From positions 124,001-188,000 of the IMG/VR virus record IMGVR_UViG_3300021963_000021: 64,000 bases of DNA; one strand, 5' to 3'. The translations under genes and the position numbers were made by a program. Shown here one piece after another: positions 15,806-34,911 of the stretch. Position 1 is the stretch's first letter; the number at the start of each line of letters is the position of its first letter. The notes beneath the pieces are model-generated. The model was not told the origin of the DNA. It worked only from the letters and a program-made list of their open reading frames with translations, and did no database searches.

Positions 15806-15808
15806 AAT

Positions 15809-15814: not shown

Positions 15815-15832
15815 AACTGACGGAAGAAGCAG

Positions 15833-17710
15833 ATGCCATATCAAATTAACAAATATAACGGTGATAGACTAGTAGTACTAGAAGATGGTGTGTTAGACAC
15901 AACCACTAGTGTTGGTCTTGTAGGTAAAAACTTCGCTGGGTATGGCGAAATACAAAATGAAAACTTCCTATGGTTGTTGGAAAATTTTGCTGGAAGAAAT
16001 GCTCCAACAAAAGCCATACAAGGACAACTATGGTATGATTCTGAAACACAGCGTATTAGAGTTTACGATGGAATTGCTTGGAACATAGTCGGCAACACTG
16101 TTGTTTCAAGTACAGAGCCTGTTGACAATGCTCCAGGTGATGGATGGTTTAATACTACTTCCAAACAGCTCTATGTCTATGACGGTACACAATTTAGATT
16201 TGTTGGACCAGAAGCTGTCACTGATTTTGGCACAACACGTCTAGTATCTACAAAGATTAGAGATGTAACTTCTAATTATAGAGCAGTAATTAAAGTAACT
16301 TTAAATGATACGGTGATTGGCATCATAGCTGAAAGAGACTTTGACATAAGTCCGTCGGATGCTGTTCCTGGATTTACGTCACTTAAGAAAGGCATAACAC
16401 TTTCTACTACTTCTTTCTTAAAAGGTGACGTAGTAGGAAATGCTTCTACAGCAACAGCGTTGGATACAGCAAGAAATATTAATGGCGTTGCCTTTGACGG
16501 ATCGGCAGATATAACAATAAAATCTAGTACTACAAATTATCTAGTAAGTGGAAATTATATTACTGGTGATGACTTTGACGGATCTACACCTATAACATGG
16601 GGAGTTGATGCTACATCGAGCAATACCCACGGTAAAGTAGTGGCCAGAGACTTGTTGGGAAATTTTTCAGCATCGACTATCACAGCAGATTTAACCGGCA
16701 ATACAACCGGAACACATTATGGAAATGTTCAAGGAAATCTATCAGGCAATACTGTAGGTACACATACAGGACCTTTAGTAGGAAATGTGACAGGAAATGT
16801 GACAGGAAATGTAACTGGTTCATTAAACGGTATTGTCGGCAACACATCACCAACATCGGGCACATTTACAGTTTTAACAGTCAGCGGCGATTTTGTAGTT
16901 GACGGGTCAGCAGGGACTGTAGGACAGATATTAAAATCAAGAGGTGCCAGCCAACCACCAGTATGGGGATCACCTGTTGTGGATCTTGACACACAGGTAA
17001 CAAATATACTAGCCGGAAATCACGGCGGCACAGGAAGATCGTCACTTACATTGAACAGTCTTGTAGTTGGCAATGGAACTGGCCCGGTTAACTTAATTGC
17101 GCCAGGGCAAGCGGGCAATGTTTTACAATCAGACGGCGGCCAATGGGCTAGCCAACCTTTAGGCATTGTTGGGCAAGTTTGTTATTTTGCCATGGCAACC
17201 CCTCCAGCTGGTTGGTTAATATGTGATGGGAGAGCAATATCTAGAACTGCTTACCCTGCTCTTTATGCGGCAATTGGTATTCAATGGGGAGATGGCGATG
17301 GCGGTTCTACATTTAATCTACCAGACCTACGTGGAGAATTTATTAGAGGTTGGGACGGCGGTCGTGGTGTAGATTCTGGAAGATCATTTGCTTCTCCTCA
17401 ATCAACAAGTGTTGGACAGCACACACATGATTTCTATGACATCTATGGAATATGGGGTGATCACGTTGGTAACTATCGAATCACAGGCGGGGTTCCTGTA
17501 CTAAATGGACCAGAGCCTCCTGTAGCTGTTGGATCTGGATTTAGAGATGTTGATGGAAATTATCATACACAGTACTTCTATTATAGTGATGCGTATGATG
17601 GAGATAACGACGGCGGAGCTTGGGCAATTAAGAATAGAACACTAACAGCCGGACAAGCAGGCGAAACAAGACCAAGAAACGTAGCAATGCTACCTTGTAT
17701 TAAATATTAA
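15833..17710 (+). CDS. Tail fibre protein with tail-collar domain (paralogue 3)
   Basis: Anchor domain; ARNINGVAFDGSADITI fibre repeat; collar motif PPAGWLICDGRAISRTAYPALYAAIG..FNLPDLRGEFIRGWD; C-terminal ETRPRNVAMLPCIKY. Confidence 0.85.
   Translation: MPYQINKYNGDRLVVLEDGVLDTTTSVGLVGKNFAGYGEIQNENFLWLLENFAGRNAPTKAIQGQLWYDSETQRIRVYDGIAWNIVGNTVVSSTEPVDNAPGDGWFNTTSKQLYVYDGTQFRFVGPEAVTDFGTTRLVSTKIRDVTSNYRAVIKVTLNDTVIGIIAERDFDISPSDAVPGFTSLKKGITLSTTSFLKGDVVGNASTATALDTARNINGVAFDGSADITIKSSTTNYLVSGNYITGDDFDGSTPITWGVDATSSNTHGKVVARDLLGNFSASTITADLTGNTTGTHYGNVQGNLSGNTVGTHTGPLVGNVTGNVTGNVTGSLNGIVGNTSPTSGTFTVLTVSGDFVVDGSAGTVGQILKSRGASQPPVWGSPVVDLDTQVTNILAGNHGGTGRSSLTLNSLVVGNGTGPVNLIAPGQAGNVLQSDGGQWASQPLGIVGQVCYFAMATPPAGWLICDGRAISRTAYPALYAAIGIQWGDGDGGSTFNLPDLRGEFIRGWDGGRGVDSGRSFASPQSTSVGQHTHDFYDIYGIWGDHVGNYRITGGVPVLNGPEPPVAVGSGFRDVDGNYHTQYFYYSDAYDGDNDGGAWAIKNRTLTAGQAGETRPRNVAMLPCIKY
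16780..16815 (+). repeat. 3x12-bp in-frame tandem repeat (AGGAAATGTGAC) encoding GNVT x3
   Basis: Two perfect copies and one with a single mismatch, read directly. Confidence 0.85.
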
Positions 17711-17722
17711 TTGGAGCGATAA

Positions 17723-19504
17723 ATGCCATATCAGGTAGACAGATACAACGGAACAACACTAGTTACAGTCCCAGATCAAACTGTGGACTCGTCTAGCTGC
17801 GACATTAAATTAATAGGTAAAAATTACGCAGGGTATGGCGAATTACAAAACGAAAATTTCTTACACATGTTGGAACATTTTCGCGGTGAATATGCCCCAA
17901 GACGCCCTATAGTTGGTCAAATATGGTATGACGAACTTAATAATAAAATAAAGTTTAGAGATAAGAATAACAGTTGGCGAACTACTGCTATCCTTGATGT
18001 ATCGCCGACGGCTCCTACAGGATTAGCAGCCGCAGACAAGGGCAATTTTTGGTATGATGATACCTTAAAGCAAATAAACGTGTGGGACGGTTCTGATCAT
18101 ATAGTTGTAGGACCAGAAGTTGCTGTAAATTTTGGTAAAACTAGACTTAGCTCTGGGACTATACGTGATAATGGTAACACTGAACACGCTATCATTAGAG
18201 TATGGGCCGATGACACTGTTGTTGCTACTATCAGCAATGACGAATACAGTATTGGCGATATTGAAGAAATCGACGGTTTTACAGATATAAAGAAAGGTAT
18301 CACTCTAGTTGATACTCCAGCAACAGGTGTTACTAGCACACCTTATAGATTTTGGGGCACAGCTAGCAACACACTAAAGTTTGTTGGAAGACCAATATCA
18401 GACTTTGTTTTAAGATCCGGCGCAGGATCTACTTTTGATGATACCGGATTTTCTATAGGCAATGATAACGATCTAAAAATATTTGTTGAATCTACAGATA
18501 GACCAGTTATTTCTAATCAATTAGGTAACAGCATTCGTATTAGAATCAAAACTGGTACAATTAATAATGACGTTGGAGTGTTTGATGTTACTGGAATGGT
18601 TCCAGGCACAACCGAAAGTTATAATTTAGGTTCAACATTGCGTAAATGGAAAGAAATACATGCTAGTGATGTATTTGGTAATGTAGTTGGTTCTGTAACT
18701 GGCAACGTCTATGCCAACGATGATTCAGTAATGGTTAATGGTTTGACTAAAGAATTAGTTGGATCGCTAACAGGATCAGTCTCGGGAAATCTAAAAGCAC
18801 TTGATAGTACTATCGCCTATGATGGTTCTACTAAAACATTTACTAGTACTAACGCAAATTTTGTCAATTCTTCTATCGACACATTAACAATTATTAATCT
18901 AATAGATGGTGATTTAAAGGGTGACTTATACGCTTCAGACTCTACCATTGCCTACAACGCAGGAACTAAACAATTTACAGGGTCGTTAGTCGGTAATGCT
19001 GCTACAGCTAGCAAATTCTTAGACCCTAAATATATTAACGGTGTAGCATTCGATGGCTCAGTAAACATAACTATCGAAGACGATACTAAGGTAGCTAAAG
19101 CTGGCAGTGCTATGACTGGCTATCTAACATTATCTGGAGCGCCGACACAGCCAAATCACGCTGCTACTAAGCAGTATGTCGATGATAAAGTTTCATCTAA
19201 GACACTATTCTTTAGTTTAGATACTAGAGGATTATCTACAACAGGTAGTACCGCAGGTTCTGTTGTGTCTATATTGAATGAACTAGCACCTGCTTCTAAT
19301 TTCTTACCAGGAACAATGGCACACATTGCCAGTACTGTACAAAATGTACAGGCCACAGCAAACGTCGGATACAGCAGTAGAATTTCTATGACTTATGTGT
19401 CTAGTGTTTCTGTGACTACCACAGTACAAAATCCTACTAGAAACAATCTTTTGATATATCAAATCAATTACAGCGGAACAAGTTGGGAATATGTATCAGG
19501 TTAA
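17723..19504 (+). CDS. Tail fibre-like protein (paralogue 4)
   Basis: Anchor domain; INGVAFDGSVNITI repeat; MTGYLTLSGAPTQPNHAATKQYVD fibre motif. Confidence 0.8.
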   Translation: MPYQVDRYNGTTLVTVPDQTVDSSSCDIKLIGKNYAGYGELQNENFLHMLEHFRGEYAPRRPIVGQIWYDELNNKIKFRDKNNSWRTTAILDVSPTAPTGLAAADKGNFWYDDTLKQINVWDGSDHIVVGPEVAVNFGKTRLSSGTIRDNGNTEHAIIRVWADDTVVATISNDEYSIGDIEEIDGFTDIKKGITLVDTPATGVTSTPYRFWGTASNTLKFVGRPISDFVLRSGAGSTFDDTGFSIGNDNDLKIFVESTDRPVISNQLGNSIRIRIKTGTINNDVGVFDVTGMVPGTTESYNLGSTLRKWKEIHASDVFGNVVGSVTGNVYANDDSVMVNGLTKELVGSLTGSVSGNLKALDSTIAYDGSTKTFTSTNANFVNSSIDTLTIINLIDGDLKGDLYASDSTIAYNAGTKQFTGSLVGNAATASKFLDPKYINGVAFDGSVNITIEDDTKVAKAGSAMTGYLTLSGAPTQPNHAATKQYVDDKVSSKTLFFSLDTRGLSTTGSTAGSVVSILNELAPASNFLPGTMAHIASTVQNVQATANVGYSSRISMTYVSSVSVTTTVQNPTRNNLLIYQINYSGTSWEYVSG

Positions 19505-19985
19505 TCTTGTTAAAAACTATCTAACCAACTCCGATGAAATTATCGAGTTAGCTGAGAAGCATCTTGATAAATTTTCGGATAGATCTGCTGGCAGTAAACA
19601 CAGTTTCAGTACACAATATGGTACTAGTAAACTAAAAAGCATGTTCTATTTTGACATGCCAGAAGAATTAAAAGCAGCGGTATTTAAAACTATACCGGAT
19701 GATCGACGATTTGTTAGTAGCTTCACTATAAACAGATATGATCCGGGTGATTATTTGATACGCCATAGAGACAGCAGCGCAGGATATTGGAAATTCAAGC
19801 TGATATTTTTACGCAGCGATAAATCTCATTTTAAGTATTATGACGAAGATGGCACAGATTATCTAGTTGATGAAGAGCCTGGTGCTTTATTAGACATGCC
19901 TGTTCATTTAGAGCATGAAGTAACAGAAATAGGACCAGATGAAAGGCCAAAATATAGTTTGGTTTTAACATGGGGAAGAATGTAA
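19491..19985 (+). CDS. 2OG-Fe(II) oxygenase family protein
   Basis: INRYDPGDYLIRHRD (HxD), distal HEVTEI, and the RPKYSLV strand typical of the DSBH oxygenase fold. Confidence 0.7.
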   Translation: MYQVNLVKNYLTNSDEIIELAEKHLDKFSDRSAGSKHSFSTQYGTSKLKSMFYFDMPEELKAAVFKTIPDDRRFVSSFTINRYDPGDYLIRHRDSSAGYWKFKLIFLRSDKSHFKYYDEDGTDYLVDEEPGALLDMPVHLEHEVTEIGPDERPKYSLVLTWGRM

Positions 19986-20456
19986 ATGGCAAAAGTAAAA
20001 AGAGACTTATTATTTTTAAAGAATACAGGTGTGTTAATTGGCGAAATCCATGACGAAACTGACCGTGAGTCTTTGAATCTAGAAAAATTTGTAGTCAAAT
20101 CTGTAGAGTTTGATACTGAACTTGGCGAATATTGGTATGGTGATCATGATACAGGCGAGATCCGCTCTAGAGTCGAAAAGCCAGTGGTCACTGAGTCATA
20201 CGTGAAGTACGATACTAATCTAACAATAGTTGGTGAATATCCTGTACACAAACAACTCAACATCATAATTGACATGTTAAACAAGAGTTCTGTAGAAAAG
20301 ACCCCAGAGTTTCTAGCTATGAAAGAGTTCATTGATACTGTTAGATCAAACTATCAAGAGCAGGTAGCTGCTTATGCTAATAATCCAGAGGGTTATACTT
20401 GGATTTCTGAAGAAGAAGAACTAGAAATGCTGGACAAAAAGCGTAGATTTGAGTAA
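19986..20456 (+). CDS. Hypothetical protein (possible fibre assembly factor)
   Basis: 156-aa ORF abutting the oxygenase inside the fibre block. Confidence 0.5.
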   Translation: MAKVKRDLLFLKNTGVLIGEIHDETDRESLNLEKFVVKSVEFDTELGEYWYGDHDTGEIRSRVEKPVVTESYVKYDTNLTIVGEYPVHKQLNIIIDMLNKSSVEKTPEFLAMKEFIDTVRSNYQEQVAAYANNPEGYTWISEEEELEMLDKKRRFE

Positions 20457-20459
20457 GAA

Positions 20460-20465
20460 TAAATA
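20460..20465 (+). promoter_or_regulatory. Late promoter core TAAATA
   Basis: Intergenic TAAATA upstream of ATG 20484. Confidence 0.55.
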
Positions 20466-20483
20466 CAAGAAACTGGAACAAAC

Positions 20484-22268
20484 ATGACTTATCGCGTAGA
20501 CAGATATAATGGAACTTTTTTAACAAATGTTGCTGATGGCACCATTGATAGCACTACGGATTTAAGGTTCGTAGGCAGAAATTACTCTGGCTACGGTGAA
20601 GTCCAGAATGAAAATTTCTTACACTTATTGGAAAATTTCTCTAATACAGTGGCCCCTAGTAGACCAATTAATGGTCAAATTTGGTATGATTCTGGTACAA
20701 AGAAACTAAAATTCTATGACGGAATAAAATTTAAAGTAGCTAGTGGAGCAGAAGTTGCTTCTACAGCACCTTCAGGACTAGCAGCAGGTGACCTATGGTT
20801 CGATTCTGGCACTAATCAGTTGTCGGCATGGAACGGTTCAAGCTTCGTTCTTATTGGTCCACAAAGCGCACCCGGTTTTGGTACTTCACAGATCGTTACA
20901 CAGGTAGTAAAAGATACTAACAACACTAGCCACGTGATACTACGAGCAGTAGTAGGTGGCGTAACTACGGCGGTATTCAGCAATGATCCAGACTTTACAC
21001 TTTCTACATCCAACAACATTTCGGGTTTTTCGGAAACCGGTCGTCAAATTAAAAAGGGTATTACACTAAACTCGGTTTTATCGTCAGGGGTCAGTGACAG
21101 CGCAGGCTATAGATTCTGGGGCACAGCAAGTAACTCGGAAAGACTGGGCGGACAAACAATTGATAAATTTATTCGTAGTGATGCCGAGGGCGGCTTCACT
21201 GCTGAGATTAATTTTAAAGCTGGCCTTACTATTAATTCTGGAAACAGAAAAGACCTGAGAATTTGGGTCAATACTAATCAGCAGCCTACTATTGAAAATC
21301 AAGTTAACGGCCCGATAGTAATGAGAATTTCAAACAGCGGATCTCAGACTGACAAAGACGATATGCTGATCATGACTAGAGATCAGTTTGATAACAGTGA
21401 TGCTACATCGGCAAATGCTATATTTCCAGGTACTACAGGTAAACTTAATTTTGGTTCATCTAATAAGAGATGGAAAAGCATCTTTGCTAACACTGTAATA
21501 TCTAATCTAGTAGGAAATGTTACTGGAAACACAACCGGTGTACACAAAGGAAACATATTATCAGCAAACGATACTGTGGCATTTAATGCTACAACAAGAG
21601 CGTTTGTTGGCGACAGCTTTACAGGATCATTTACTGGCCCATTAACTGGCCAATCAACCTCATCTATTACATCATCTAAATTAAACAACTTAGATCCTAG
21701 TGAATTGGCTACTCCTGGATTAGCAACCATTCCTATTAGAACATCGTCTGGTATTATTCGAGCTGCGAGATTTGAAGGTCAAGCAACAGATTCTATAACA
21801 GTTAACGGTAGAGCACTATCTGTAACCAAAGATCCAAACACAATCGTCCTGCGAAACGCTGGTGGCGACGTTGAAGCACGTTATTTTAACGGCACGGCCA
21901 CTTCAGCTCAATATGCTGACTTAGCAGAGATATATAAAACTGACAAAGAATACGAAGTTGGAACTGTAGTAGCAGTTGGCGGTGATGCTGAAGTAACTGA
22001 AAGTATTTTAGGTGATAGAGCCATTGGTGTTATATCTGAGCATCCTGCGTATCTAATGAACAAAGATGCCGAAGGACAAGCGGTAGCACTAAAAGGTCGT
22101 GTGCCTGTTAAAGTTTCTGGAAGAGTTAAAAAAGGTCAGAGACTAGTAGCAGGCGCCAACGGCAGAGCAGTAGCCGCCACACATCATACATTAATGGATG
22201 TTTTTGCGATAGCATTAGAAACGCACACAGAACCGACAGACGGCGTGATTGAAGCGATAATAATATAA
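20484..22268 (+). CDS. Tail fibre-like protein with C-terminal intramolecular chaperone/autocleavage domain (paralogue 5)
   Basis: Anchor domain; C-terminal YADLAEIY..VGTVV..GVISEHPAYLMN..VALKGRVPVKV (peptidase G2/IMC-like). Confidence 0.75.
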   Translation: MTYRVDRYNGTFLTNVADGTIDSTTDLRFVGRNYSGYGEVQNENFLHLLENFSNTVAPSRPINGQIWYDSGTKKLKFYDGIKFKVASGAEVASTAPSGLAAGDLWFDSGTNQLSAWNGSSFVLIGPQSAPGFGTSQIVTQVVKDTNNTSHVILRAVVGGVTTAVFSNDPDFTLSTSNNISGFSETGRQIKKGITLNSVLSSGVSDSAGYRFWGTASNSERLGGQTIDKFIRSDAEGGFTAEINFKAGLTINSGNRKDLRIWVNTNQQPTIENQVNGPIVMRISNSGSQTDKDDMLIMTRDQFDNSDATSANAIFPGTTGKLNFGSSNKRWKSIFANTVISNLVGNVTGNTTGVHKGNILSANDTVAFNATTRAFVGDSFTGSFTGPLTGQSTSSITSSKLNNLDPSELATPGLATIPIRTSSGIIRAARFEGQATDSITVNGRALSVTKDPNTIVLRNAGGDVEARYFNGTATSAQYADLAEIYKTDKEYEVGTVVAVGGDAEVTESILGDRAIGVISEHPAYLMNKDAEGQAVALKGRVPVKVSGRVKKGQRLVAGANGRAVAATHHTLMDVFAIALETHTEPTDGVIEAIII

Positions 22269-22277
22269 GGATTAGAG

Positions 22278-23495
22278 ATGGCATTACCAGCAACCCCAGC
22301 GGCACAGTACGATCCAGTTAGATATAGCGATTATAACAATCTCTATAATTATGTTGCGGATACGTTAGGCCCAATACCAGTAGACGGCGGCAATGTCTTT
22401 GGGTACAGACTTGGTCGCGGTTATGGCCAATTGACATCGACTTTTAATTCTTTATTGTATCCTTTTACTAGAACTATTACAAATATCAGTAATGCTAATC
22501 CTGCGGTAGTTACGACATCATTAGCACACAACCTTGTTGCTGACGAAGTGGTGTTTTTAGGAAACTTTACACAGAGCGGATGGAATACTTCTCCTCTAGA
22601 AGGAAACTATCAGATAGTTGACCAGGTGTTGACATCTAACACCTTTACACTTAGAAACATAGATACACGATTAACTAATGGTTATGTTGCTTGGGGGTCT
22701 GGACAAACAGGCCAATGCAGCCAGCCTATTATTAGTGCCAACCAATTCAACAATCTAAAAACAGATGTAAACAAAATCGTTAAACATACTACAGGAGTTA
22801 ACGCAACAGTAGCGCAGTTACCTATAGTTGCTCGAGGAACTGCTATTAACCATAGCGTGTATCTTCCATATTACAATACAGTAGACAGTGTTTATAACGC
22901 TAACTTAAAATTAGGTGAAAGTATTGAGTATCTAACACCAACTAGACCTACAAGGACTGCTAGTTGGAACTCTAGTATCACTACAGAACTTACAGTACAG
23001 TGGCCAACTGAATATGATTTTGTACAATATTTTAACACCGGCGGCCTTTTAAAATTTAACATTTTAGTTACATCTATTTCAAGTGGCTCGAGCACAGCAA
23101 AAAACCAATCATACTTCGATTTGGCTAACAATAATTTTCCATTATATTATGGTGCTTATACCAAAGCAGTAATGGGATACGTTGACACCACCAAGTGGGC
23201 CAACGCAGGTGCGTATGGAGCATCGCTAGCTGGCTATACTGAAATCTATAGAGTGGCGCCATCGGGCACCTATGCTGCTAACTATTATAGACTCCAGCAT
23301 CGTTTGATCAATGCTCGAACATTGTCATTTATTCTAACTGCTCAAGACGATGTTGCCAACGCATTTGCTCAAGATGTCACTGCTGACTTTGAATTTAATA
23401 TATCACTGATATATTCCACAGGATCAGTTGTACTGAATTCCAATCCGTTGACTCAGGTTTCTATCGTTTATCAGCAGACCTGGAACGGTTCATAA
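22278..23495 (+). CDS. Putative virion structural protein
   Basis: T/N/Y-rich; ITNISNANPAVVTTSLAHNL beta-module typical of phage structural proteins. Confidence 0.55.
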   Translation: MALPATPAAQYDPVRYSDYNNLYNYVADTLGPIPVDGGNVFGYRLGRGYGQLTSTFNSLLYPFTRTITNISNANPAVVTTSLAHNLVADEVVFLGNFTQSGWNTSPLEGNYQIVDQVLTSNTFTLRNIDTRLTNGYVAWGSGQTGQCSQPIISANQFNNLKTDVNKIVKHTTGVNATVAQLPIVARGTAINHSVYLPYYNTVDSVYNANLKLGESIEYLTPTRPTRTASWNSSITTELTVQWPTEYDFVQYFNTGGLLKFNILVTSISSGSSTAKNQSYFDLANNNFPLYYGAYTKAVMGYVDTTKWANAGAYGASLAGYTEIYRVAPSGTYAANYYRLQHRLINARTLSFILTAQDDVANAFAQDVTADFEFNISLIYSTGSVVLNSNPLTQVSIVYQQTWNGS

Positions 23496-23510: not shown

Positions 23511-23546
23511 AATATCCTAGCATAAGTATCATGCTAGGATATTTTT
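23511..23546 (+). promoter_or_regulatory. 13-bp perfect hairpin covering the RBS of 23547, with late-promoter-like TAAGTA at its loop; may also act as a terminator
   Basis: AATATCCTAGCAT (23511-23523) / ATGCTAGGATATT (23531-23543); TAAGTA at 23523-23528; T run then ATG. Confidence 0.75.
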
Positions 23547-23903
23547 ATGGATAAAAATCTGGAAAACATAATAGAGTTGTCGGATAAGATGTTGTCTTTT
23601 AGGACACAGCAGCTCTACGTCAAAGAAAAATTTGAAGCAGAAACTGTAGTAGGGTATTCCGGCGGAATCTTTAAAATTGATCAATCTTTGATATCCTATA
23701 TCAAAACTATAATTGATCTAGGAAAAAAAGACAATGTTGTAGTATTGGACATGAATCAACAGCCGATTCTAATACAAGATCTAACAGTGTTTCTAAGTGA
23801 TATAGTTGATAAACATCTTTCTGCCCTAGGAAGATACTATTTCCAAATACAAGAACTTAAAAAATCAAAACCGGGTTCTTGGAGAATAACACGCAAGGCA
23901 TGA
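23547..23903 (+). CDS. Hypothetical protein
   Basis: 118-aa ORF, first gene of the glycosyltransferase block. Confidence 0.6.
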   Translation: MDKNLENIIELSDKMLSFRTQQLYVKEKFEAETVVGYSGGIFKIDQSLISYIKTIIDLGKKDNVVVLDMNQQPILIQDLTVFLSDIVDKHLSALGRYYFQIQELKKSKPGSWRITRKA

Positions 23904-24730
23904 AACAAGGTGCCCTAATATTTGCCCATAATTCAGAGACTCTTAATTACTTAAAGATGTCTTTAGTGTCGGCAAGGCTAGTTAAAAAAAATCTTAATGT
24001 TCCTGTTTGTATAGTCACTGATCAATACAGTCTTGATCAAACACAAATAGACCTTTCTCAGCATGTTGATCATGTAGTATTAATTCCCAAACCCGCAGTA
24101 GATAATTATCGTAACTTAAACAACACAAGACATGCTTTTATAAATGGCAGTAGACACTCTGCTTGGAGTCTTACACCGTTTGATCGAACGCTGCTGATAG
24201 ATTCAGATCTGTTGATTATGTCTGATGCTTATTCTCAGTACTGGGACTCAGAAGATTTTTTAATGTGCGGCAGTATGACAGATTTAATTGGCAATAAATT
24301 AAGCCAAGAAGAGATGCGAGTATCGGATCATACAATTAGACTTCGATGGGCTACTGCTGTAATGTTTACAAAGAATGAATATACTAAGAAGATTTTTGAT
24401 ACAGTTGAATTTGTAAAAAGAGAATACAGGTATTTTTCGGATCTTTACGAATTTGATTCTAGAAATTTTAGAAATGACATTGCTTTTTCGATAGCAGCAC
24501 ACATAACAAACGGCTTTAAAGAAGCAGACATATTTTTACCATCACCGTTGTTTTTTACAGACGTTGATAACATCATTGATGTAGTTGACGACCAACTTTT
24601 GATATTAGCTACTAACGGATCAAAAAATATAATACTTCCGTTAAATGGAATCGACATACATTTCCTTAATAAGAAAAATATTTTAGAAAATTATGATAAG
24701 TTAATGGAGTTAGTATGTTTGGATACTTGA
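23879..24730 (+). CDS. GT-A (GT8-like) glycosyltransferase
   Basis: LTPFDRTLLIDSDL (DxD), RNDIAFSIA, IHFLNK. Start may be ATG 23900. Confidence 0.65.
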   Translation: MENNTQGMKQGALIFAHNSETLNYLKMSLVSARLVKKNLNVPVCIVTDQYSLDQTQIDLSQHVDHVVLIPKPAVDNYRNLNNTRHAFINGSRHSAWSLTPFDRTLLIDSDLLIMSDAYSQYWDSEDFLMCGSMTDLIGNKLSQEEMRVSDHTIRLRWATAVMFTKNEYTKKIFDTVEFVKREYRYFSDLYEFDSRNFRNDIAFSIAAHITNGFKEADIFLPSPLFFTDVDNIIDVVDDQLLILATNGSKNIILPLNGIDIHFLNKKNILENYDKLMELVCLDT

Positions 24731-25572
24731 TCATAATATCTAATGACAGTAAAAGAAACTATGCTGCTATGGCCACGCTGTTGGCGTTGTCTATCAAACA
24801 TACACAGCCTAGTGGCTACGACAATGTAGCAATAGTTACAGATGATCAAGAACAGGTAAAACTTTTTAAAGCATTGCCATACTTTGATAGAGTAATATTT
24901 TGGAACGAAAAAACACATTGGGATGGTAGAAGTTTCATGGATAAATTGACTCCGTGGGAACAGACTATTTGTCTCGATGCTGATATGATTTTTACTAGAG
25001 ATTACAGTCATTGGGTAGATCACTTCTTAAAAAATTGTGAGTTGTATATTCCTTCTACGGCCTATACATTTAGAGGTGACATAGTTACTTCTAATTATTA
25101 TAGAGAAACTTTTGTAAAAAATTCTCTGCCTAATCTTTATTCTGCTTATACCTACTTTACAAAAACCAGCGAGCTGGCTAGAGACTTTTTCAATTTACAA
25201 AGAGCTATAATAGAAAATCCGATTGAGTTTAAAAATCTCTATCTAGAAAAATTAATTCCTGAAGTGGTAGGAACAGATGAAGCTTTTGCTCTTGCTGCTA
25301 AAATTTTAGGAATAGAATCTCAAATATCTTACAAGATGAATTTTCCTAGATTTGTCCACATGAAGCCAATGGTCCAAGATTTTAAAAATCCTATTACAAC
25401 AACAGGCGTTGATCTTGGGTATTATTTTAATAATGATAATAAAATAAAGATAGGACAATACTATCAGACTGATATATTACACTACGCAGATAAAGATCTT
25501 GATATTGAAAGCATGATTAAGAATTATGAAAAGATGATGTTTAAAGGATTAAAAAACTATGAACATCTATAA
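24715..25572 (+). CDS. GT-A (GT8-like) glycosyltransferase
   Basis: LTPWEQTICLDADM (DxD), GTDEAFALA, FVHMK; paralogous to the previous gene. Confidence 0.65.
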   Translation: MFGYLIIISNDSKRNYAAMATLLALSIKHTQPSGYDNVAIVTDDQEQVKLFKALPYFDRVIFWNEKTHWDGRSFMDKLTPWEQTICLDADMIFTRDYSHWVDHFLKNCELYIPSTAYTFRGDIVTSNYYRETFVKNSLPNLYSAYTYFTKTSELARDFFNLQRAIIENPIEFKNLYLEKLIPEVVGTDEAFALAAKILGIESQISYKMNFPRFVHMKPMVQDFKNPITTTGVDLGYYFNNDNKIKIGQYYQTDILHYADKDLDIESMIKNYEKMMFKGLKNYEHL

Positions 25573-26143
25573 GATCTATGTTGATAAAAATTTGGGGACA
25601 GTTATAATGTTCTCAAACAGCGATCTGCCAGAAATGGATCATCCTGATTTTTTACCATTTACTGTTCCTGAGCAATATAGTGAACTATTTGATAGAATAA
25701 AAGAGGGTAAAGATTCTTTGAGCAGAATACGTGTAAACGTAAGCAGTAAAGAATTTAAAATTTATTCTTTAAATGATTTTAAAGACACTGACTATGAGTA
25801 TGGTAAATGGTTTAAATTACCTTGTTATAGAAGGAATCCTCCCGTCGAGGCAGATTTGATATTAACGATTATCAGTAAAAATTTTAAACCTTATCTATCT
25901 TTAAAGTTTGTCGGGGACCCTAAGATTTTAAAAGATCCCAAACGTCATTCTTTAAATTTCTATTTCACTAAACAAAATGATTTAAATTGTTTGTATGAAT
26001 CTTTCCATACAGACTTCGACAAACTAGACAAGAACAACGAAATCGTTTTTCCTATAGAGCGTATAGATCCTGATAAATTATTTCAAAATAATTTCAGTGT
26101 TTATTATAGAAAAATTTTTAAAACGGTATATTACGTATTATGA
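25559..26143 (+). CDS. Hypothetical protein
   Basis: 194-aa ORF overlapping both neighbours. Confidence 0.6.
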   Translation: MNIYKIYVDKNLGTVIMFSNSDLPEMDHPDFLPFTVPEQYSELFDRIKEGKDSLSRIRVNVSSKEFKIYSLNDFKDTDYEYGKWFKLPCYRRNPPVEADLILTIISKNFKPYLSLKFVGDPKILKDPKRHSLNFYFTKQNDLNCLYESFHTDFDKLDKNNEIVFPIERIDPDKLFQNNFSVYYRKIFKTVYYVL

Positions 26144-27042
26144 AACCATCAGATTTAGAAGTGATTTTTATCAGTTATGACGAGCCTAACGCAGATTTAA
26201 ATTATTCAGACTTATTAACTAAAGCACCATGGGCTAAAAGAATACACGGTGTTAAAGGCAGCGACAATGCGCATAAAGCTGCCGCAGCTGAATCATCTAC
26301 TGATTGGTTTGTTACAGTAGATGGTGACAACAAAGTAGATCCGAAGTTTTTTAACATTGAAATAGAAGAATTGCCAAATGTTAATGTATACGGATGGTGT
26401 GGTAAAAACAACATAAATGGTCTACGCTATGGCAATGGTGGTTTGAAAATCTGGAACAAACAATTTGTATTAGATATGAAGACACACGAGTCTGCTGAAG
26501 ATCCAAGAGCACAGGTTGATTTTTGCTGGGAAGCCGGATACATGAACTTTCCTACAGTGTTCAGTGAAACAATCATTAACTCAACTCCCTTCCAAGCATG
26601 GCGAGCAGGATTCCGTGAAGGTGTTAAGATGCTGTTGAAAGACGGACTTAAGATTGATAAAGCACGTCTTAAACAAGAAGTATATTGGCATAACATACAT
26701 AGACTTCGTATGTGGAGTTGCGTCGGGTCACATGTACCTAATGGAAATTATGCCATACTCGGTGCTAGGATGGGCAGCTGGATGGCATATTGTACTGATT
26801 GGGATCACATAAATGTTAGAGATTTTGATGTGTTAAAAGATCTCTATGAAAAGAATGTCACGCACGATGATATTGAGAATGACATAAAAGATCTAGGAAA
26901 AGAGTTACGAATTAACCTGGGGTTGAATTGGTCTTATTTTATACCCGAACAAAGTGAGTATGTTGTAGAGATGTATGAAGAATCTATAGCATTGGGACAG
27001 ACATATTTTAACAAGGCTCCGATATGGAAAAGTTCTTCTTAG
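26140..27042 (+). CDS. GT-A-fold glycosyltransferase-like protein
   Basis: IFISYDEPNA..VKGSDNAHKAAA..FVTVDGDN (DxD)..YGNGGLK..AWRAGFREGVK. Confidence 0.65.
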   Translation: MKPSDLEVIFISYDEPNADLNYSDLLTKAPWAKRIHGVKGSDNAHKAAAAESSTDWFVTVDGDNKVDPKFFNIEIEELPNVNVYGWCGKNNINGLRYGNGGLKIWNKQFVLDMKTHESAEDPRAQVDFCWEAGYMNFPTVFSETIINSTPFQAWRAGFREGVKMLLKDGLKIDKARLKQEVYWHNIHRLRMWSCVGSHVPNGNYAILGARMGSWMAYCTDWDHINVRDFDVLKDLYEKNVTHDDIENDIKDLGKELRINLGLNWSYFIPEQSEYVVEMYEESIALGQTYFNKAPIWKSSS

Positions 27043-27704
27043 CATTTGACGATCCAAATTCAAAAGAAAACTTTGATCGTGCTAGATCGATGATCCCTGA
27101 TCTACAGGAAGTTAACACAAAAATGTCTATAGTTGAATCACATAAACTGTGCGGGTCAATGTCGTTGACTAATCAATTTATGGTATTAGATGCTGATTCG
27201 TACTTGTTAGATGAATTCAATATGGCAGAACTTTATAACATCTGTAAAGACTCAGATTGGATTTACATATTTTCTGCTAGAAATCCCGTAAACGATTTAG
27301 AGTATGGTCACGGTGGTGTAAAGATATTTCAAAAAAAATATTTTAATAACAATGAAGTTATAGATTTTTCTACTAGCTTTTTAGGAAAGATCCGCACTGT
27401 TAAAAAAACACTAAACATACATAGATTTAATTCTAGCGCATTTCACGCATGGCGTACAGCATTTAGAGAATGTGTTAAGCTAAGTTCTTCCACTATTGTT
27501 AACAGAAATAAAATAGACGACGAATATAGATTGACAGTGTGGTGTGAAAAATTCAACGATGTTGAATACGCAGAATTTGTCAAACTAGGAGCGATACAGG
27601 GCAGAGACTTTGGTAATTCAAATAAAAATAATCCTGCTGAGCTTAAAAAGATAAATGATTTTATATGGTTAAACAGATCCTATGAACAAGTGGTACAACG
27701 ATAG
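27024..27704 (+). CDS. GT-A-fold glycosyltransferase-like protein (paralogue of 26140)
   Basis: FMVLDADS (DxD)..YGHGGVK..AWRTAFRECVK. Confidence 0.6.
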   Translation: MEKFFLAFDDPNSKENFDRARSMIPDLQEVNTKMSIVESHKLCGSMSLTNQFMVLDADSYLLDEFNMAELYNICKDSDWIYIFSARNPVNDLEYGHGGVKIFQKKYFNNNEVIDFSTSFLGKIRTVKKTLNIHRFNSSAFHAWRTAFRECVKLSSSTIVNRNKIDDEYRLTVWCEKFNDVEYAEFVKLGAIQGRDFGNSNKNNPAELKKINDFIWLNRSYEQVVQR

Positions 27705-29085
27705 ACTTGAATACAAAAAAGAATTAGACACCATTGGTCACGGATTTTGTTCGGCTAAATGGAGTCAAGTTACCATACACTTAGGTACGGGGCATAATCA
27801 CAGTTGTCATCATCCTAGGACACATTTTATTCCTATTGAAGAAATAGTCGAAGATCCAACAGCATTACACAATACAAAATTTAAAAAAGAAATACGTAGG
27901 CAGATGCTCAACGGTGAACGTCCAACGGAATGCGATTACTGTTGGAAAGTCGAAGATGCTGGCGAGCCTCTTAGCGACAGAGTATTAAAAAGTTATGAAC
28001 CGTGGAGCAGAGATTATTTTGACAAAATAATAAAAGCAGGATCGGAAGGTAATGTAGATCCTAGCTACTTAGAAGTTAGTTTTTCAAATGTTTGTAATTT
28101 TAAATGTTCTTATTGCTCTCCTGATGTTAGCAGTCAGTGGATGGAAGAAATTAAACAGCACGGACCTTACCCTACGTCTATACGATACAATAATATTGAT
28201 TGGATACAGAAGCAGGATAAGATGCCAATTCCTGAGCGTGAATACAATCCATATGTAGAAGCATTTTGGAAGTGGTGGCCGGACCTTTATAAAAATTTAC
28301 ATACATTCCGCATTACAGGCGGTGAACCATTATTAACTAAACACACATTTCGTGTATTAGATTATATAATTGAAAATCCTAACAAGAATCTAGAACTTAG
28401 CATTAACAGTAATTTCTGTGTACCTGATGATGTATTTGAAAAGTTTCTTTCGAAATTAGAAATAATACAATCAAAAAAATCAGTGAAGCATTTAGTTGTG
28501 TTTACTAGCTGTGAAGCAGCAGGGCCAAAAGCTGAATATATTAGACACGGATTGAATTATGCCAAATGGTATTCTAATTGTAATTTGTTTTTACAAAGAA
28601 TACCAAATGCTAAACTAGGTATTATGAGCACCTATAATGCGCTGTCAGTTACTAGCTATACTGATTTCTTAAAAGACATGTGGTTGTTAAATTATACGCA
28701 CAGCAAAAAGAAATGGTATCAATCAATCGCTAGCTTAGTGTCGACTGGTGATTTAGGTAAGCATCCATTGATATTAGATATTCCGTATCTTAATAACCCA
28801 CCGCATCAGACTGTGGGAATACTTACGCCCGACTACATACCTCGTATACAAGAATCTATTGATTACATGAACTCTAATAAAGAGTTCTATAAATCAGAAA
28901 CTCAAAAATTAGAAAGACTATTAAAAGTTTTTGAACCAAAAATTCTTGATGACAATCCTGGTAAAGCGCAGCACAGAAAAGATTTTGTTTCTTTTGTTGA
29001 CGAGCACGATAAGAGACGAGGAACGAACTTTTTAAGTACGTTCCCCGAAATGACAGAGTTTTATAACTTTTGTAAAACTTACTGA
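27682..29085 (+). CDS. Radical SAM protein with N-terminal Cys-rich (SPASM/twitch-like) segment
   Basis: CNFKCSYC (CxxxCxxC), ITGGEPLL; N-terminal CSAKW..SCHH..CDYCW. Confidence 0.85.
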   Translation: MNKWYNDRLEYKKELDTIGHGFCSAKWSQVTIHLGTGHNHSCHHPRTHFIPIEEIVEDPTALHNTKFKKEIRRQMLNGERPTECDYCWKVEDAGEPLSDRVLKSYEPWSRDYFDKIIKAGSEGNVDPSYLEVSFSNVCNFKCSYCSPDVSSQWMEEIKQHGPYPTSIRYNNIDWIQKQDKMPIPEREYNPYVEAFWKWWPDLYKNLHTFRITGGEPLLTKHTFRVLDYIIENPNKNLELSINSNFCVPDDVFEKFLSKLEIIQSKKSVKHLVVFTSCEAAGPKAEYIRHGLNYAKWYSNCNLFLQRIPNAKLGIMSTYNALSVTSYTDFLKDMWLLNYTHSKKKWYQSIASLVSTGDLGKHPLILDIPYLNNPPHQTVGILTPDYIPRIQESIDYMNSNKEFYKSETQKLERLLKVFEPKILDDNPGKAQHRKDFVSFVDEHDKRRGTNFLSTFPEMTEFYNFCKTY

Positions 29086-29747
29086 CTTACAAAATCGCCG
29101 GTCATTGGAAATACTGCGGCGATGACACAGGCACATTCTTTTGCTATTTGTTGATGTTCTAACTGTGTACCATTAGCTGAACGCAATTCGATAAAGTGAA
29201 TCCAACTACGCAATGTGCCATTCATGTATAACCGGCTTTCTGTTAGACCTTCTGGTAACACAGCACGAGCTTGTTCTTTAGCAATGCCACGCTCTATTGC
29301 TTCGGAGTAAGCTACGCTAGCCTGTTCAATGATCCATTTTTGCTTGGCATCCCACCATGCTTGTAACTCTGTATCATTTGTGATGATGCTGTTCTGACGA
29401 TTCTTGTTGTCTTGAAGTCTGGCTTCTCTTGTAACGAACGCCAAATCTTTAGTTGGGTCAGCATAGCGTTGACTGAACTCTTGGAAACTAAAACTTCTGT
29501 GTCGCAAGATTTGTCTAGCGATATCTCTTGTGGTTGTAATTTCACAACAGGCTGAGACCATTTCGAGTGGGCTCCAGTGTTTGTGTTTGACCAAGTATCG
29601 GATGAGTTTTTCTGATGTTTCGGTGTTAAGTTGGTTGGCTGGATTGCTGACACGGGCGCAATACGCAATGAGTTCTTGCGCATCTGAGATGCCCATATCT
29701 GCAAATTCCTGTGTTGGCTGTGAATAGGAAATAAGTCGTACATTCAT
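29079..29747 (-). CDS. thyX: FAD-dependent thymidylate synthase
   Basis: RHRSFSFQEFSQRY signature; HWSPLE; EQARAVLP. Confidence 0.95.
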   Translation of the reverse strand: MNVRLISYSQPTQEFADMGISDAQELIAYCARVSNPANQLNTETSEKLIRYLVKHKHWSPLEMVSACCEITTTRDIARQILRHRSFSFQEFSQRYADPTKDLAFVTREARLQDNKNRQNSIITNDTELQAWWDAKQKWIIEQASVAYSEAIERGIAKEQARAVLPEGLTESRLYMNGTLRSWIHFIELRSANGTQLEHQQIAKECACVIAAVFPMTGDFVSQ

Positions 29748-34905: not shown

Positions 34906-34911
34906 GTTTAT

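What the first reader, a model, noticed from the sequence alone, without database searches (positions are those of the whole stretch)
23547..29085. Late operon of four GT-A-like genes plus a radical SAM directly after the fibre genes: virion glycosylation?
Seen: two paralogous pairs of DxD proteins (23879/24715 and 26140/27024) and a Cys-rich radical SAM, overlapping head to tail, on the structural strand behind a late-type promoter. Known: some phages glycosylate capsid or tail proteins using GTs encoded among structural genes. Inference: a glycan-building and tailoring pathway for the Ser/Thr-rich fibres or for the host surface, separate from the DNA-modification GT.
Basis: partly seen in the sequence, partly recalled or inferred. 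Interest (0 to 1): 0.65.

Follow-up and report, generated by a model that had tools for sequence, protein, structure and literature searches.

The report
Jumbo-phage glycosyltransferase and radical-SAM operon
Directly after its tail-fibre genes, this 364-kb phage carries a seven-gene operon of four sugar-transferase-like enzymes, one radical SAM enzyme and two unknown proteins; hundreds of uncultured phages share it, nobody has annotated it, and it most likely decorates a virion protein with a tailored glycan, though the target is unproven.

Summary
The genes are g1 to g7 (23547-29085, + strand). They overlap head to tail and follow five tail-fibre paralogues.

- **g2/g3:** ancient paralogues (hhalign E 3.6e-18). 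Their profile matches glycogenin (GT8), including the DxD motif.
- **g5/g6:** ancient paralogues (E 2.8e-39). A confident model shows a GT-A fold, remotely GT2-like, with an invariant DxD.
- **g7:** a clear member of NCBIfam NF033640, the N-terminal twitch-domain radical SAM family (346 bits, cut-off 170).
- **g1 and g4:** no recognisable family.

None of g1-g6 matches Pfam, PHROGs or NCBIfam. The same gene order recurs in about 80 fetched IMG/VR loci and in one cultured phage, Ralstonia phage RsoM2USA, where every gene is annotated as hypothetical.

All seven proteins are soluble. The genome has no ThyA-type hydroxymethylase, which argues against DNA glycosylation. In Bdellovibrionota, relatives of g7 sit beside GT1/GT2 genes, other radical SAM genes and M16 peptidases.

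Virion (fibre) glycosylation is the best reading. It rests on synteny and analogy, and no glycan or acceptor is shown.

In place of a clear late promoter there is a covarying hairpin that sequesters the g1 ribosome-binding site.

The parts
23511..23543 (+). Conserved stem-loop (13-bp stem, 7-nt loop) ending 3 nt before the g1 ATG. The 3' arm contains the Shine-Dalgarno-like AGGA. The loop and stem top carry the conserved motif AGCATAAGT.
   Evidence: MFE -21.3 kcal/mol, z -5.5. Stable in 38 of 47 distinct related loci, and the SD-like motif is paired in 33 of 37. 94% of cells are paired against 76% in shuffles, with 48 compensatory cells against 18 (0/500). No Rfam family matches.
23547..23903 (+). 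g1, 118 aa. Conserved first gene of the module, function unknown, with invariant residues G36, G39, G40, F42, D68, N70 and P73.
   Evidence: Orthologue present in the same position in nearly all loci that have upstream flank. Alignment A6. No match in Pfam, PHROGs, NCBIfam, PADLOC or PDB.
23879..24730 (+). g2, GT8-like GT-A glycosyltransferase paralogue 1. The DxD is D108-S-D110. The likely true start is the ATG at 23900 (276 aa).
   Evidence: The joint g2/g3 profile matches glycogenin-1/2 at E 9.5e-7 over profile positions 13-117, including the DxD. Invariant residues D110, H261 and K265. Paralogy to g3.
24715..25572 (+). g3, GT8-like GT-A glycosyltransferase paralogue 2 (DxD = DAD).
   Evidence: The g2/g3 family has 2069 protein clusters, none with a Pfam domain.
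25559..26143 (+). g4, 194 aa. Fast-evolving accessory protein of unknown function, possibly a beta-sandwich (weak lead).
   Evidence: A positional orthologue of 170-210 aa lies between g3 and g5 in all 24 loci examined. The Atlas model has low confidence (pLDDT 0.61), with Ig/FN3-like matches at TM below 0.5. No PDB or Pfam match.
26140..27042 (+). g5, 300 aa. GT-A-fold, GT2-like glycosyltransferase domain (residues 1-150, DxD = D61-G-D63) plus a C-terminal helical domain. It is the most conserved gene of the module.
   Evidence: AlphaFold2 model pLDDT 90.7. Foldseek top hit PBCV-1 A64R at E 5e-5. VIA-align Z 10.5 to B4GALNT1 and 9.9 to STIV A197, but also 10.3 to MobA. hhalign to bacterial GT2 proteins: 60%, E 8.7e-5, DxD aligned. 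53-79% identity across loci. More than 7600 homologous clusters, all named hypothetical.
27024..27704 (+). g6, 226 aa. Shorter paralogue of g5 (DxD = DAD). In other clades it is fused to extra C-terminal domains (347-672 aa).
   Evidence: Fusions seen; the extra domains have no Pfam match.
27682..29085 (+). g7, 467 aa. Radical SAM enzyme with an N-terminal twitch (auxiliary Fe-S) domain. It is the last gene of the + strand block.
   Evidence: NF033640 at 345.8 bits, cut-off 170. Invariant residues C23, C84, C87, C138, C142, C145 and GGEPL, with C42 nearly invariant. The nearest solved sequences are MoaA (E 7e-5) and, weakly, viperin.
11550..23495 (+). Context: five tail-fibre paralogues (11550-13733, 13745-15805, 15833-17710, 17723-19504, 20484-22268), two small genes, and up1 (22278-23495). 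These are candidate acceptors.
   Evidence: PHROG tail-fibre matches and a shared N-terminal domain. The fibre at 20484-22268 has a borderline C-terminal IMC/Peptidase_G2 domain. S+T content is 18-21%, against 9-13% in the enzymes.
29079..29747 (-). Context: a convergent ThyX gene whose end overlaps the end of g7 by 7 nt. It marks the end of the + strand transcription unit.
   Evidence: Thy1 at E 5.6e-44. The strand and skew switch is seen.

Best explanation
g1-g7 form one transcription and translation unit. It encodes a soluble, cytoplasmic glycosylation-and-tailoring pathway that acts late in infection on a virion protein. The most likely targets are the tail fibres encoded immediately upstream.

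Proposed steps:
1. The two GT8-like enzymes (g2, g3; retaining type by family analogy) and the two GT2-like enzymes (g5, g6; inverting type by analogy) add sugars in sequence from host nucleotide-sugars. The phage has no NTP-transferase of its own.
2. The twitch-domain radical SAM enzyme (g7) performs a radical tailoring step on the sugar donor, on the glycan or on the acceptor residue.
3. g1 and g4 are non-catalytic accessory proteins.
4. The conserved hairpin that hides the g1 ribosome-binding site keeps enzyme output low, or conditional, relative to the fibre genes.

Shown: gene order, paralogy, folds and families, conservation, solubility, the hairpin.
Inferred: sugar transfer, late timing, the acceptor, the radical SAM chemistry, the roles of g1 and g4.
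For: Family and fold assignments.

Synteny with fibre genes:
- The seven genes keep their order after fibre genes in about 80 IMG/VR loci at only 30-65% identity.
- The same holds in the metagenome contigs L003-L007.
- In Ralstonia phage RsoM2USA the cluster (ORF354-348) follows the tail sheath, a virion structural protein and a fibre-like ORF355.

Signs of one operon:
- A TAAATA motif of the kind found before the fibre gene stands before g1 in 25/46 loci. It is never found before g3, g5 or g7 (0/53, 0/55, 0/46).
- This motif is 2.6-fold depleted genome-wide, and 35% of its copies lie 8-45 nt upstream of a same-strand start.

Cellular location and substrates:
- No transmembrane segment or signal peptide.
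- No NTP_transferase and no ThyA-type hydroxymethylase in the genome.

Links between the radical SAM enzyme and glycosyltransferases:
- g7 relatives in Bdellovibrionota are directly adjacent to GT1 or GT2 genes. 20 of 39 long loci hold a glycosyltransferase, some starting 0-2 nt after the radical SAM gene.
- The same loci hold M16 peptidases and SPASM radical SAM genes, which suggest peptide or protein substrates.

Other support:
- The top fold match of g5 is a viral glycosyltransferase that glycosylates a capsid protein.
- Contigs from three freshwater RNA libraries cover the fibre genes and g1-g6.
Against: - No glycan, acceptor or enzyme activity is shown.
- Synteny inside phage structural modules is often conserved for reasons unrelated to function.
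- The GT-A fold is shared with nucleotidyltransferases (MobA Z 10.3, IspD about 9).
- Sequence support for g5 as GT2 is weak (60% probability; no Pfam hit).
- A close g7 homologue (55% identity) occurs in related phages without g2/g3/g5/g6 nearby, so the radical SAM gene is not bound to these glycosyltransferases.
- The fibre-like protein next to the Bdellovibrio relative is a single case.
- RsoM2USA virion mass spectrometry covered only ten abundant bands and reported no glycosylation.
- RNA-library contigs can derive from contaminating DNA and say nothing about timing.
Confidence: 0.45

Rival explanations
1. The module makes or remodels a non-protein glycoconjugate or an unusual nucleotide-sugar. 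Examples are a soluble metabolite, a lipid-linked or cell-envelope precursor at the inner face of the membrane, or depletion and rewiring of host sugar-nucleotide pools. The radical SAM enzyme would act on a nucleotide or nucleotide-sugar.
For: - The nearest solved relatives of g7 by sequence act on nucleoside triphosphates (MoaA E 7e-5, viperin weakly).
- Neighbours of g7 relatives in bacteria include a carbamoyltransferase, methyltransferases and HAD/S6PP hydrolases, which are typical of sugar tailoring.
- Large T4-like cyanophages also carry clusters of glycosyltransferases with a radical SAM gene. Their authors ascribe these clusters to cell-wall modification (PMC12801897).
- GT8 and GT2 enzymes commonly build LPS and polysaccharides (established knowledge).
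Against: - The module has no membrane protein, flippase or polymerase, and all its products are soluble.
- The module has no sugar-nucleotide synthesis gene, and the genome has no NTP_transferase.
- The invariable position behind the fibre genes is not explained.
Confidence: 0.2
2. The module modifies a peptide or a non-virion protein (phage or host) in a RiPP-like manner. The radical SAM enzyme would install a radical modification and the glycosyltransferases would glycosylate it. g1 or g4 could be the substrate or a recognition partner.
For: - SPASM/twitch radical SAM enzymes mostly mature peptides or proteins (established knowledge).
- Bacteriovoracaceae carry a recurring cassette of M16 peptidase, C-terminal-SPASM radical SAM, N-twitch radical SAM, GT1 and a 321-aa protein.
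- In some related loci the module is followed directly by further radical SAM genes, including a B12-dependent one (L003-L005), and radical SAM genes form tandem arrays of up to eight in Bdellovibrionota.
- The phage's separate radical SAM island holds Asp/Asn beta-hydroxylase-like and prolyl-hydroxylase-like oxygenases.
- SunS, an S-glycosyltransferase of a glycocin, is among the fold matches of g5 (Z 8.2).
Against: - No short precursor-like ORF or leader peptide was seen.
- g1 has no Cys and is not Ser/Thr-rich.
- No protease or exporter lies in the phage module.
- This rival overlaps with the best explanation if the modified protein is a fibre.
Confidence: 0.15
3. The glycosyltransferases glycosylate phage DNA (hypermodified bases) to evade restriction. 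The radical SAM enzyme would take part in base hypermodification.
For: - Phage glycosyltransferases often act on DNA (reviewed in the sources quoted).
- Nucleotide-metabolism genes lie next door on the other strand: ThyX at 29079-29747 and a QueE-like radical SAM at 34045-34920.
Against: - The genome has no ThyA-type dCMP/dUMP hydroxymethylase to provide the usual acceptor.
- The module is transcribed with the structural block, on the strand opposite to the DNA-metabolism genes.
- Four transferases plus a twitch-domain radical SAM enzyme is unlike the known DNA glycosylation systems.
- ThyX makes ordinary dTMP.
Confidence: 0.07

Closest known systems
NCBIfam NF033640 (N_Twi_rSAM, twitch domain-containing radical SAM protein)
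   Same: g7 matches end to end (residues 22-461 on model positions 4-398) at 345.8 bits against a cut-off of 170. It has the CxxxCxxC and GGE motifs and four N-terminal cysteines.
   Different: The family has a name but no established substrate or reaction. Here it is a single copy welded to four glycosyltransferase-like genes.
Glycogenin / CAZy GT8 retaining GT-A glycosyltransferases
   Same: The g2/g3 profile aligns to glycogenin over the nucleotide-binding half, including the DxD (E about 1e-6). An invariant His and Lys lie near the C-terminus, where GT8 enzymes carry their third metal ligand (the position is judged from memory and was not aligned by a tool).
   Different: - No Pfam PF01501 hit even at E 10.
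- Only about 105 of 280 residues align.
- Identity is below 20%.
- The family is restricted to phages, with 2069 clusters and no annotation.
PBCV-1 A64R (PDB 2P6W) and STIV A197 (PDB 2C0N): small viral GT-A glycosyltransferases
   Same: They are among the best fold matches to the g5 N-terminal domain (Foldseek E 5e-5; VIA-align Z 8.7 and 9.9). They are virus-encoded, soluble and cytoplasmic, and A64R glycosylates a virion protein.
   Different: - 10-14% identity.
- g5 has an extra 150-residue helical domain and a paralogous partner.
- These enzymes come from a eukaryotic and an archaeal virus.
- Nucleotidyltransferases score equally well on fold alone.
Mycobacteriophage virion glycosylation (Che8, Corndog, Myrna; Freeman et al. 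2023, as summarised in PMC12619734)
   Same: Phage-encoded glycosyltransferases put glycans on capsid and tail-tube subunits. This is the known precedent for the proposed function.
   Different: Those systems were shown by glycoproteomics, and no radical SAM enzyme is reported in the summaries read here. Nothing is demonstrated for the present module.
Clusters of glycosyltransferases with a radical SAM gene in large T4-like cyanophages (S-SCSM2R ORF302-310; PMC12801897)
   Same: Several glycosyltransferases sit together with a 'radical SAM maturase' in a large phage genome, and the function is unresolved.
   Different: The glycosyltransferases belong to other families recognised by standard annotation, and sugar-nucleotide enzymes are present. 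Homology to g1-g7 was not tested. No cultured phage other than RsoM2USA matched g2, g5 or g7 by tblastn.
Cytoplasmic O-glycosylation of serine-rich-repeat adhesins by successive GT8 and GT2 enzymes in Gram-positive bacteria (recalled from memory, not tested)
   Same: It may work alike: soluble GT8- and GT2-type enzymes act one after another on a Ser/Thr-rich fibrous adhesin before assembly or export.
   Different: No homology was tested. Those systems start with a GT-B pair (GtfA/B) and have no radical SAM enzyme.

Membership tests
Radical SAM superfamily / NF033640 N_Twi_rSAM | CxxxCxxC motif that binds the SAM-cleaving [4Fe-4S] cluster | tested here: met
   C138, C142 and C145 are invariant in 27 aligned homologues. 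The sequence is visible.
Radical SAM superfamily / NF033640 N_Twi_rSAM | Score above the curated cut-off of the family model, over its full length | tested here: met
   345.8 bits against a cut-off of 170, model positions 4-398 of 398. Pfam Radical_SAM alone scores 27.1 bits, just under its cut-off of 29.5.
Radical SAM superfamily / NF033640 N_Twi_rSAM | N-terminal twitch domain with cysteines for an auxiliary Fe-S cluster | tested here: met
   C23, C84 and C87 are invariant and C42 is nearly so. A paralogue in L003 shows a Pfam SPASM domain at residues 22-85, N-terminal to the radical SAM core.
Radical SAM superfamily / NF033640 N_Twi_rSAM | Reductive cleavage of SAM and a defined substrate | not testable with these tools
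   This needs anaerobic reconstitution and a 5'-deoxyadenosine assay.
CAZy GT8 (glycogenin/LgtC-like) | GT-A nucleotide-binding half with a DxD motif, recognisable by sequence | tested here: met
   The g2+g3 profile matches glycogenin-1/2 at E 9.5e-7 to 4.7e-6, with the DxD aligned. D110 is invariant and D108 is conserved in at least 90%.
CAZy GT8 (glycogenin/LgtC-like) | Match to the curated family model (Pfam PF01501 Glyco_transf_8) | tested here: not met
   No Pfam family for g2 or g3 even at E 10. None of the 120 best-scoring homologous clusters listed (of 2069) carries a Pfam domain.
CAZy GT8 (glycogenin/LgtC-like) | C-terminal His that completes the metal site | tested here: inconclusive
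   H261 and K265 are invariant in both paralogues. The tool alignment to glycogenin stops at residue about 117, so equivalence is not shown.
GT-A fold, GT2-like glycosyltransferases | Rossmann-like GT-A fold with the DxD after the fourth strand | tested here: met
   Model pLDDT 90.7. GT-A structures dominate the matches at Z 8-10.5. D61 and D63 are invariant in g5 and g6 homologues.
GT-A fold, GT2-like glycosyltransferases | Sequence membership in GT2 (Pfam PF00535 or a profile match) | tested here: inconclusive
   No Pfam hit. hhalign to 22 bacterial GT2 proteins gives 60% probability, E 8.7e-5, over 104 columns. Nucleotidyltransferases with the same fold score as well (MobA Z 10.3).
Phage virion-glycosylation systems | Glycan covalently attached to a virion protein and dependent on the phage glycosyltransferases | not testable with these tools
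   This needs glycoprotein staining or mass spectrometry of virions. The only virion proteomics on a carrier phage covered ten abundant bands.
Phage virion-glycosylation systems | Glycosyltransferase genes linked to the structural gene block | tested here: met
   Same strand and directly downstream of the fibre genes here, in about 80 loci and in RsoM2USA.
Phage DNA glycosylation (hypermodified bases) | A route to hydroxymethylated pyrimidines as acceptor (ThyA-like hydroxymethylase) | tested here: not met
   No PF00303 match in the 364-kb genome, rated 100% complete by CheckV. Only ThyX is present.

The most novel reading that the evidence does not exclude
The module installs a previously undescribed, radical-SAM-tailored glycan or glyco-amino-acid linkage on tail fibres. 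Its enzyme set would come from a toolkit shared by a large clade of uncultured jumbo phages and predatory Bdellovibrionota: N-twitch radical SAM enzymes, B12-dependent radical SAM enzymes, and glycosyltransferases from families unknown to Pfam. This would be a new class of protein post-translational modification that shapes host recognition.
Probability: 0.2. Interest if true: 0.85.

Novelty: new variant of a known kind. Interest (0 to 1): 0.6.

Why it matters
- **Unannotated families:** Two glycosyltransferase-like families (more than 7600 and about 2000 protein clusters) and two accessory families are absent from Pfam, PHROGs and NCBIfam. Yet they form one of the best-conserved non-structural modules in a widespread clade of freshwater, estuarine and soil jumbo phages.
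- **If they glycosylate fibres:** Virion glycosylation would be common among phages of Gram-negative hosts and not only a mycobacteriophage curiosity. That bears on receptor binding, resistance to proteases and recognition by host or grazer.
- **The radical SAM family:** The pairing with a twitch-domain radical SAM enzyme of unknown chemistry gives this large orphan family (NF033640) a concrete, testable biological context.
- **An experimental handle:** One cultured phage, RsoM2USA, carries the cluster and can be used for tests.

Tried and rejected
**Searches that found nothing**
- Megablast of the region against 50,697 phage records gave no match.
- Pfam, PHROGs, NCBIfam and PADLOC gave nothing for g1-g6. 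g7 gave only a weak pVip match of 27.5 bits, which reflects the generic radical SAM core.
- Profile searches of g1, g4 and g5/g6 against PDB sequences found nothing credible.

**Lead that did not generalise: fibre next to the radical SAM relative in bacteria**
- Bdellovibrio locus L106 has a 1965-aa protein with a Peptidase_S74 chaperone domain beside the radical SAM relative and four GT2 genes.
- An iterative search with that domain found it in only 2 loci.
- Ten further large neighbouring proteins proved to be housekeeping genes, other radical SAM enzymes or unknowns.
- I therefore do not use it as support.

**Other checks**
- Neighbours of the 55%-identical g7 homologue in other phages (L088-L091) are unrelated to g2/g3/g5/g6. 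Two of them have homologues elsewhere in this genome.
- The fibres contain no collagen-like repeats.
- The genome has no Sigma70_r2 match, so no late sigma factor was identified.
- The loop motif AGCATAWNT is not enriched in the window, so it is not a general promoter motif.
- Relatives cannot be drawn for a virus record.

- A g5+g6 complex prediction: four attempts unanswered. No verdict exists on heterodimers, and I make no binding claim.

**Literature**
- The Freeman et al. 2023 paper is not held.
- 'Moraphages', with four core glycosyltransferase orthogroups (PMC12619734), may or may not be this clade. This was not tested.

Full report
**Setting.** The window is bases 124001-188000 of a 363,943-bp IMG/VR phage record that CheckV rates as complete. 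From base 1 to 29085 all large ORFs are on the + strand.
- The block begins with a 3,617-aa ORF.
- It continues with five paralogous proteins that share an N-terminal domain and match tail-fibre PHROGs.
- The last of these, at 20484-22268, has a borderline C-terminal Peptidase_G2/IMC domain.
- A 405-aa protein follows at 22278-23495.
- Then comes the flagged operon. It ends in a 7-nt convergent overlap with a ThyX gene on the other strand.

**The observation.** The operon has seven genes, not five: g1 (118 aa), g2 (283 aa), g3 (285 aa), g4 (194 aa), g5 (300 aa), g6 (226 aa) and g7 (467 aa). Each overlaps the next by 4-25 nt.
- g2 and g3 are paralogues: BLASTP E 4e-5; profile-profile 99%, E 3.6e-18 over 254 columns.
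- g5 and g6 are paralogues: BLASTP E 1e-18; profile-profile 100%, E 2.8e-39.
- The two pairs are unrelated in sequence.
- All four proteins carry a DxD motif that is invariant or nearly so in alignments of 37 and 49 homologues.
- g2 most likely starts at the ATG at 23900. That start overlaps the g1 stop as ATGA, and the closest relatives are 276 aa.

**What the proteins are.** None of g1-g6 matches Pfam (even at E 10), PHROGs, NCBIfam or PADLOC.
- *g2/g3.* A profile of the two families matches glycogenin-1 and -2 (GT8) at E 9.5e-7 and weaker, over the nucleotide-binding half with the DxD aligned. An invariant His and Lys lie near the C-terminus.
- *g5.* An AlphaFold2 model built on the g5/g6 alignment is confident (pLDDT 90.7, pTM 0.89).
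  - Residues 1-150 form a GT-A fold. The top Foldseek hit is the PBCV-1 A64R capsid glycosyltransferase (E 5e-5).
  - VIA-align gives Z 10.5 to B4GALNT1, 9.9 to STIV A197 and 9.1 to SpsA. It also gives 10.3 to the nucleotidyltransferase MobA.
  - A profile comparison with 22 bacterial GT2 proteins gives 60% probability (E 8.7e-5) with the DxD aligned.
  - I read g5 and g6 as remote GT2-like transferases. The 150-residue helical C-terminal domain of g5 was not tested on its own.
- *g7.* It scores 345.8 bits against NCBIfam NF033640, the twitch-domain radical SAM family (cut-off 170). It has invariant C138/C142/C145, GGEPL and four N-terminal cysteines, three invariant and C42 in at least 90%. 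Its nearest solved relatives by sequence are MoaA (E 7e-5) and, weakly, viperin.
- *g1.* It remains unassigned.
- *g4.* It remains unassigned. The Atlas model of g4 is poor, with weak Ig/FN3-like matches.
- *Solubility.* No protein has a hydrophobic segment or signal peptide.

**Distribution.**
- The g5 family has more than 7,600 protein clusters, mostly 60-65% identical and all named 'hypothetical'.
- The g2/g3 family has 2,069 clusters.
- 404 IMG/VR contigs encode a g5 relative.
- In the 80 loci fetched, the order g1-g2-g3-(g4)-g5-g6-g7 is kept, preceded by the fibre gene wherever flank is available.
- A positional g4 of 170-210 aa is present in all 24 loci examined, although BLAST misses many of them.
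- g5 is the most conserved member (53-79%).
- In some clades g6 carries extra C-terminal domains. In some, further radical SAM genes follow directly: one with an N-terminal SPASM domain and one B12-dependent.
- Among 50,697 cultured-phage records only Ralstonia phage RsoM2USA has homologues. Its ORF354-348 are syntenic, all hypothetical, and lie next to the tail sheath and a virion structural protein.

**Context of the radical SAM enzyme elsewhere.** Chromosomal relatives of g7 (40-48% identity) were found mostly in Bdellovibrionota.
- 25 of 73 loci hold two or more copies, and some hold up to eight in tandem.
- 20 of 39 loci with at least 15 kb of sequence hold a GT1 or GT2 gene. In several, the glycosyltransferase starts 0-2 nt after the radical SAM gene.
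- Bacteriovoracaceae carry a recurring cassette: M16 peptidase, C-terminal-SPASM radical SAM, N-twitch radical SAM, a 774-aa GT1 protein and a 321-aa protein.
- Other neighbours include a carbamoyltransferase, methyltransferases and flagellin.
- One Bdellovibrio locus has a 1,965-aa protein with a Peptidase_S74 fibre chaperone domain beside the radical SAM gene and four GT2 genes. This did not recur.
- In related phages a 55%-identical g7 homologue sits in another context, without these glycosyltransferases.

The robust association is therefore between the radical SAM enzyme and glycosyltransferases, with hints of peptide or protein substrates. An association with fibres is not established in bacteria.

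**The rest of the genome.**
- There are 12 radical SAM matches. Nine lie in an island at 240-264 kb that also holds an Asp/Asn beta-hydroxylase-like protein, a prolyl-hydroxylase-like 2OG oxygenase and an epimerase.
- There is no NTP_transferase, so sugar donors would have to be host nucleotide-sugars.
- There is no ThyA-type hydroxymethylase, which removes the usual acceptor for DNA glycosylation.

**Regulation.** The 51-nt spacer before g1 does not hold an obvious promoter. It holds a 13-bp stem-loop followed by a U run (-21.3 kcal/mol, z -5.5).
- A stable hairpin ending just before the ATG occurs in 38 of 47 distinct related loci. The Shine-Dalgarno-like motif lies in the paired 3' arm in 33 of 37.
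- On 18 aligned loci, 94% of cells pair, against 76% in shuffles and 29-48% in slid controls. 48 cells are compensatory against 18 expected (0/500).
- No Rfam family matches.
- In more distant loci the loop carries TAAATA, which resembles the T4 late promoter TATAAATA.
  - The motif stands before g1 in 25/46 loci and before the fibre gene in 24/36. It is never found before g3, g5 or g7.
  - In this genome it is 2.6-fold depleted, and 35% of its copies lie 8-45 nt upstream of a same-strand start, against 4-6% for control words of the same base composition.
  - It precedes the window genes that start at 10888, 15833, 17723 and 20484.
  - Before g1 in this window the equivalent sequence is ATAAGTAT, and the conserved loop word is not a general motif.
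- My inference is as follows. Read-through transcripts from the fibre genes fold the hairpin, which terminates them or hides the ribosome-binding site. Transcripts that start in the loop would lack the 5' arm and be translated. This is untested.
- Contigs from three freshwater RNA libraries cover the fibre genes and g1-g6. In one library they break exactly at the hairpin (23531 | 23544). Contigs cannot prove transcription, ends or timing.

**Interpretation.** The best-supported reading is a soluble, late, operon-encoded glycosylation and tailoring pathway that acts on a virion protein, most plausibly the adjacent fibres (confidence 0.45).
- It explains the fixed position behind the fibre genes across deep divergence.
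- It explains the lack of membrane components and of sugar-nucleotide synthesis genes.
- It fits the fold kinship to viral glycosyltransferases that modify virion proteins.

Three rivals remain:
- A non-protein glycoconjugate or nucleotide-sugar product (0.2).
- A RiPP-like or non-virion protein target (0.15). This overlaps with the main reading if the target is a fibre.
- DNA glycosylation (0.07).

**Novelty.** Phage glycosyltransferases that decorate virions are known (mycobacteriophages, chloroviruses). The new elements here are:
- two glycosyltransferase-like families unseen by the curated libraries;
- their fixed pairing as ancient paralogues;
- their coupling to an orphan twitch-domain radical SAM enzyme;
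- the covarying leader hairpin.

I rate the finding a new variant of a known kind, with interest 0.6.

Noticed in passing
window 23511-23543: A covarying stem-loop lies immediately 5' of the g1 start and pairs the Shine-Dalgarno-like AGGA. It is followed by a U run and is conserved across diverged phages, with compensatory changes in 8 of 12 pairs. No Rfam family matches. It could be a terminator, a translational gate, or both.
   Followed up: yes
window 10875, 15809, 17701 and 20459 (+ strand); whole genome G000: TAAATA, which resembles the T4 late promoter, is 2.6-fold depleted genome-wide (145 observed, 379 expected). 35% of its copies lie 8-45 nt upstream of a same-strand gene start. It precedes several fibre genes and, in relatives, g1.
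   Followed up: partly
G000:C1:239000-264600 (outside the window; loci L170, L171): A second island holds nine radical SAM genes, including a second N-twitch paralogue at G000 256936-258336. It also holds an Asp/Asn beta-hydroxylase-like protein, a 2OG-Fe(II) prolyl-hydroxylase-like protein with a cold-shock domain, and an NAD-dependent epimerase. This suggests extensive protein or glycan tailoring.
   Followed up: partly
L092-L169 (Bdellovibrionota genome contigs), e.g. L151, L152, L165, L121: Predatory Bdellovibrionota carry tandem arrays of up to eight N-twitch radical SAM paralogues. Bacteriovoracaceae carry a recurring cassette of M16 peptidase, C-terminal-SPASM radical SAM, N-twitch radical SAM, GT1 and a 321-aa protein. 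No description of either was found in the literature searches run here.
   Followed up: partly
L003:12900-20351, also L004, L005, L061, L082: In some related phages the module is extended directly by more radical SAM genes (one with an N-terminal SPASM domain, one B12-binding) and by several proteins without any family. In the same clades g6 is fused to unknown C-terminal domains (347-672 aa).
   Followed up: partly
window 34045-34920 (-) and 29079-29747 (-): A QueE-like radical SAM gene (PHROG 2076, E 5e-51) and ThyX lie on the opposite strand. The QueE-like gene hints at 7-deazaguanine DNA modification, separate from the operon studied.
   Followed up: no
window 23879-23903: The listed TTG start of g2 is probably wrong. 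The ATG at 23900 overlaps the g1 stop as ATGA and gives 276 aa, as in the closest relatives.
   Followed up: partly
L088-L091; G000:C1:221017-224363: Related phage contigs carry a 55%-identical g7 homologue inserted between homologues of two genes. In this genome those two genes flank only two small ORFs. The radical SAM gene is therefore mobile between genomic contexts within this phage group.
   Followed up: partly
window 21500-27499: Near-identical sequence (mostly 90-99%) occurs in freshwater, riverine, estuarine and marine metagenomes from many studies, and in contigs of three freshwater metatranscriptome libraries. In one RNA library the contigs break exactly at the hairpin.
   Followed up: partly
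window 22-10875: A single 3,617-aa ORF opens the structural block. RsoM2USA has a 2,541-aa virion structural protein in the equivalent position.
   Followed up: no
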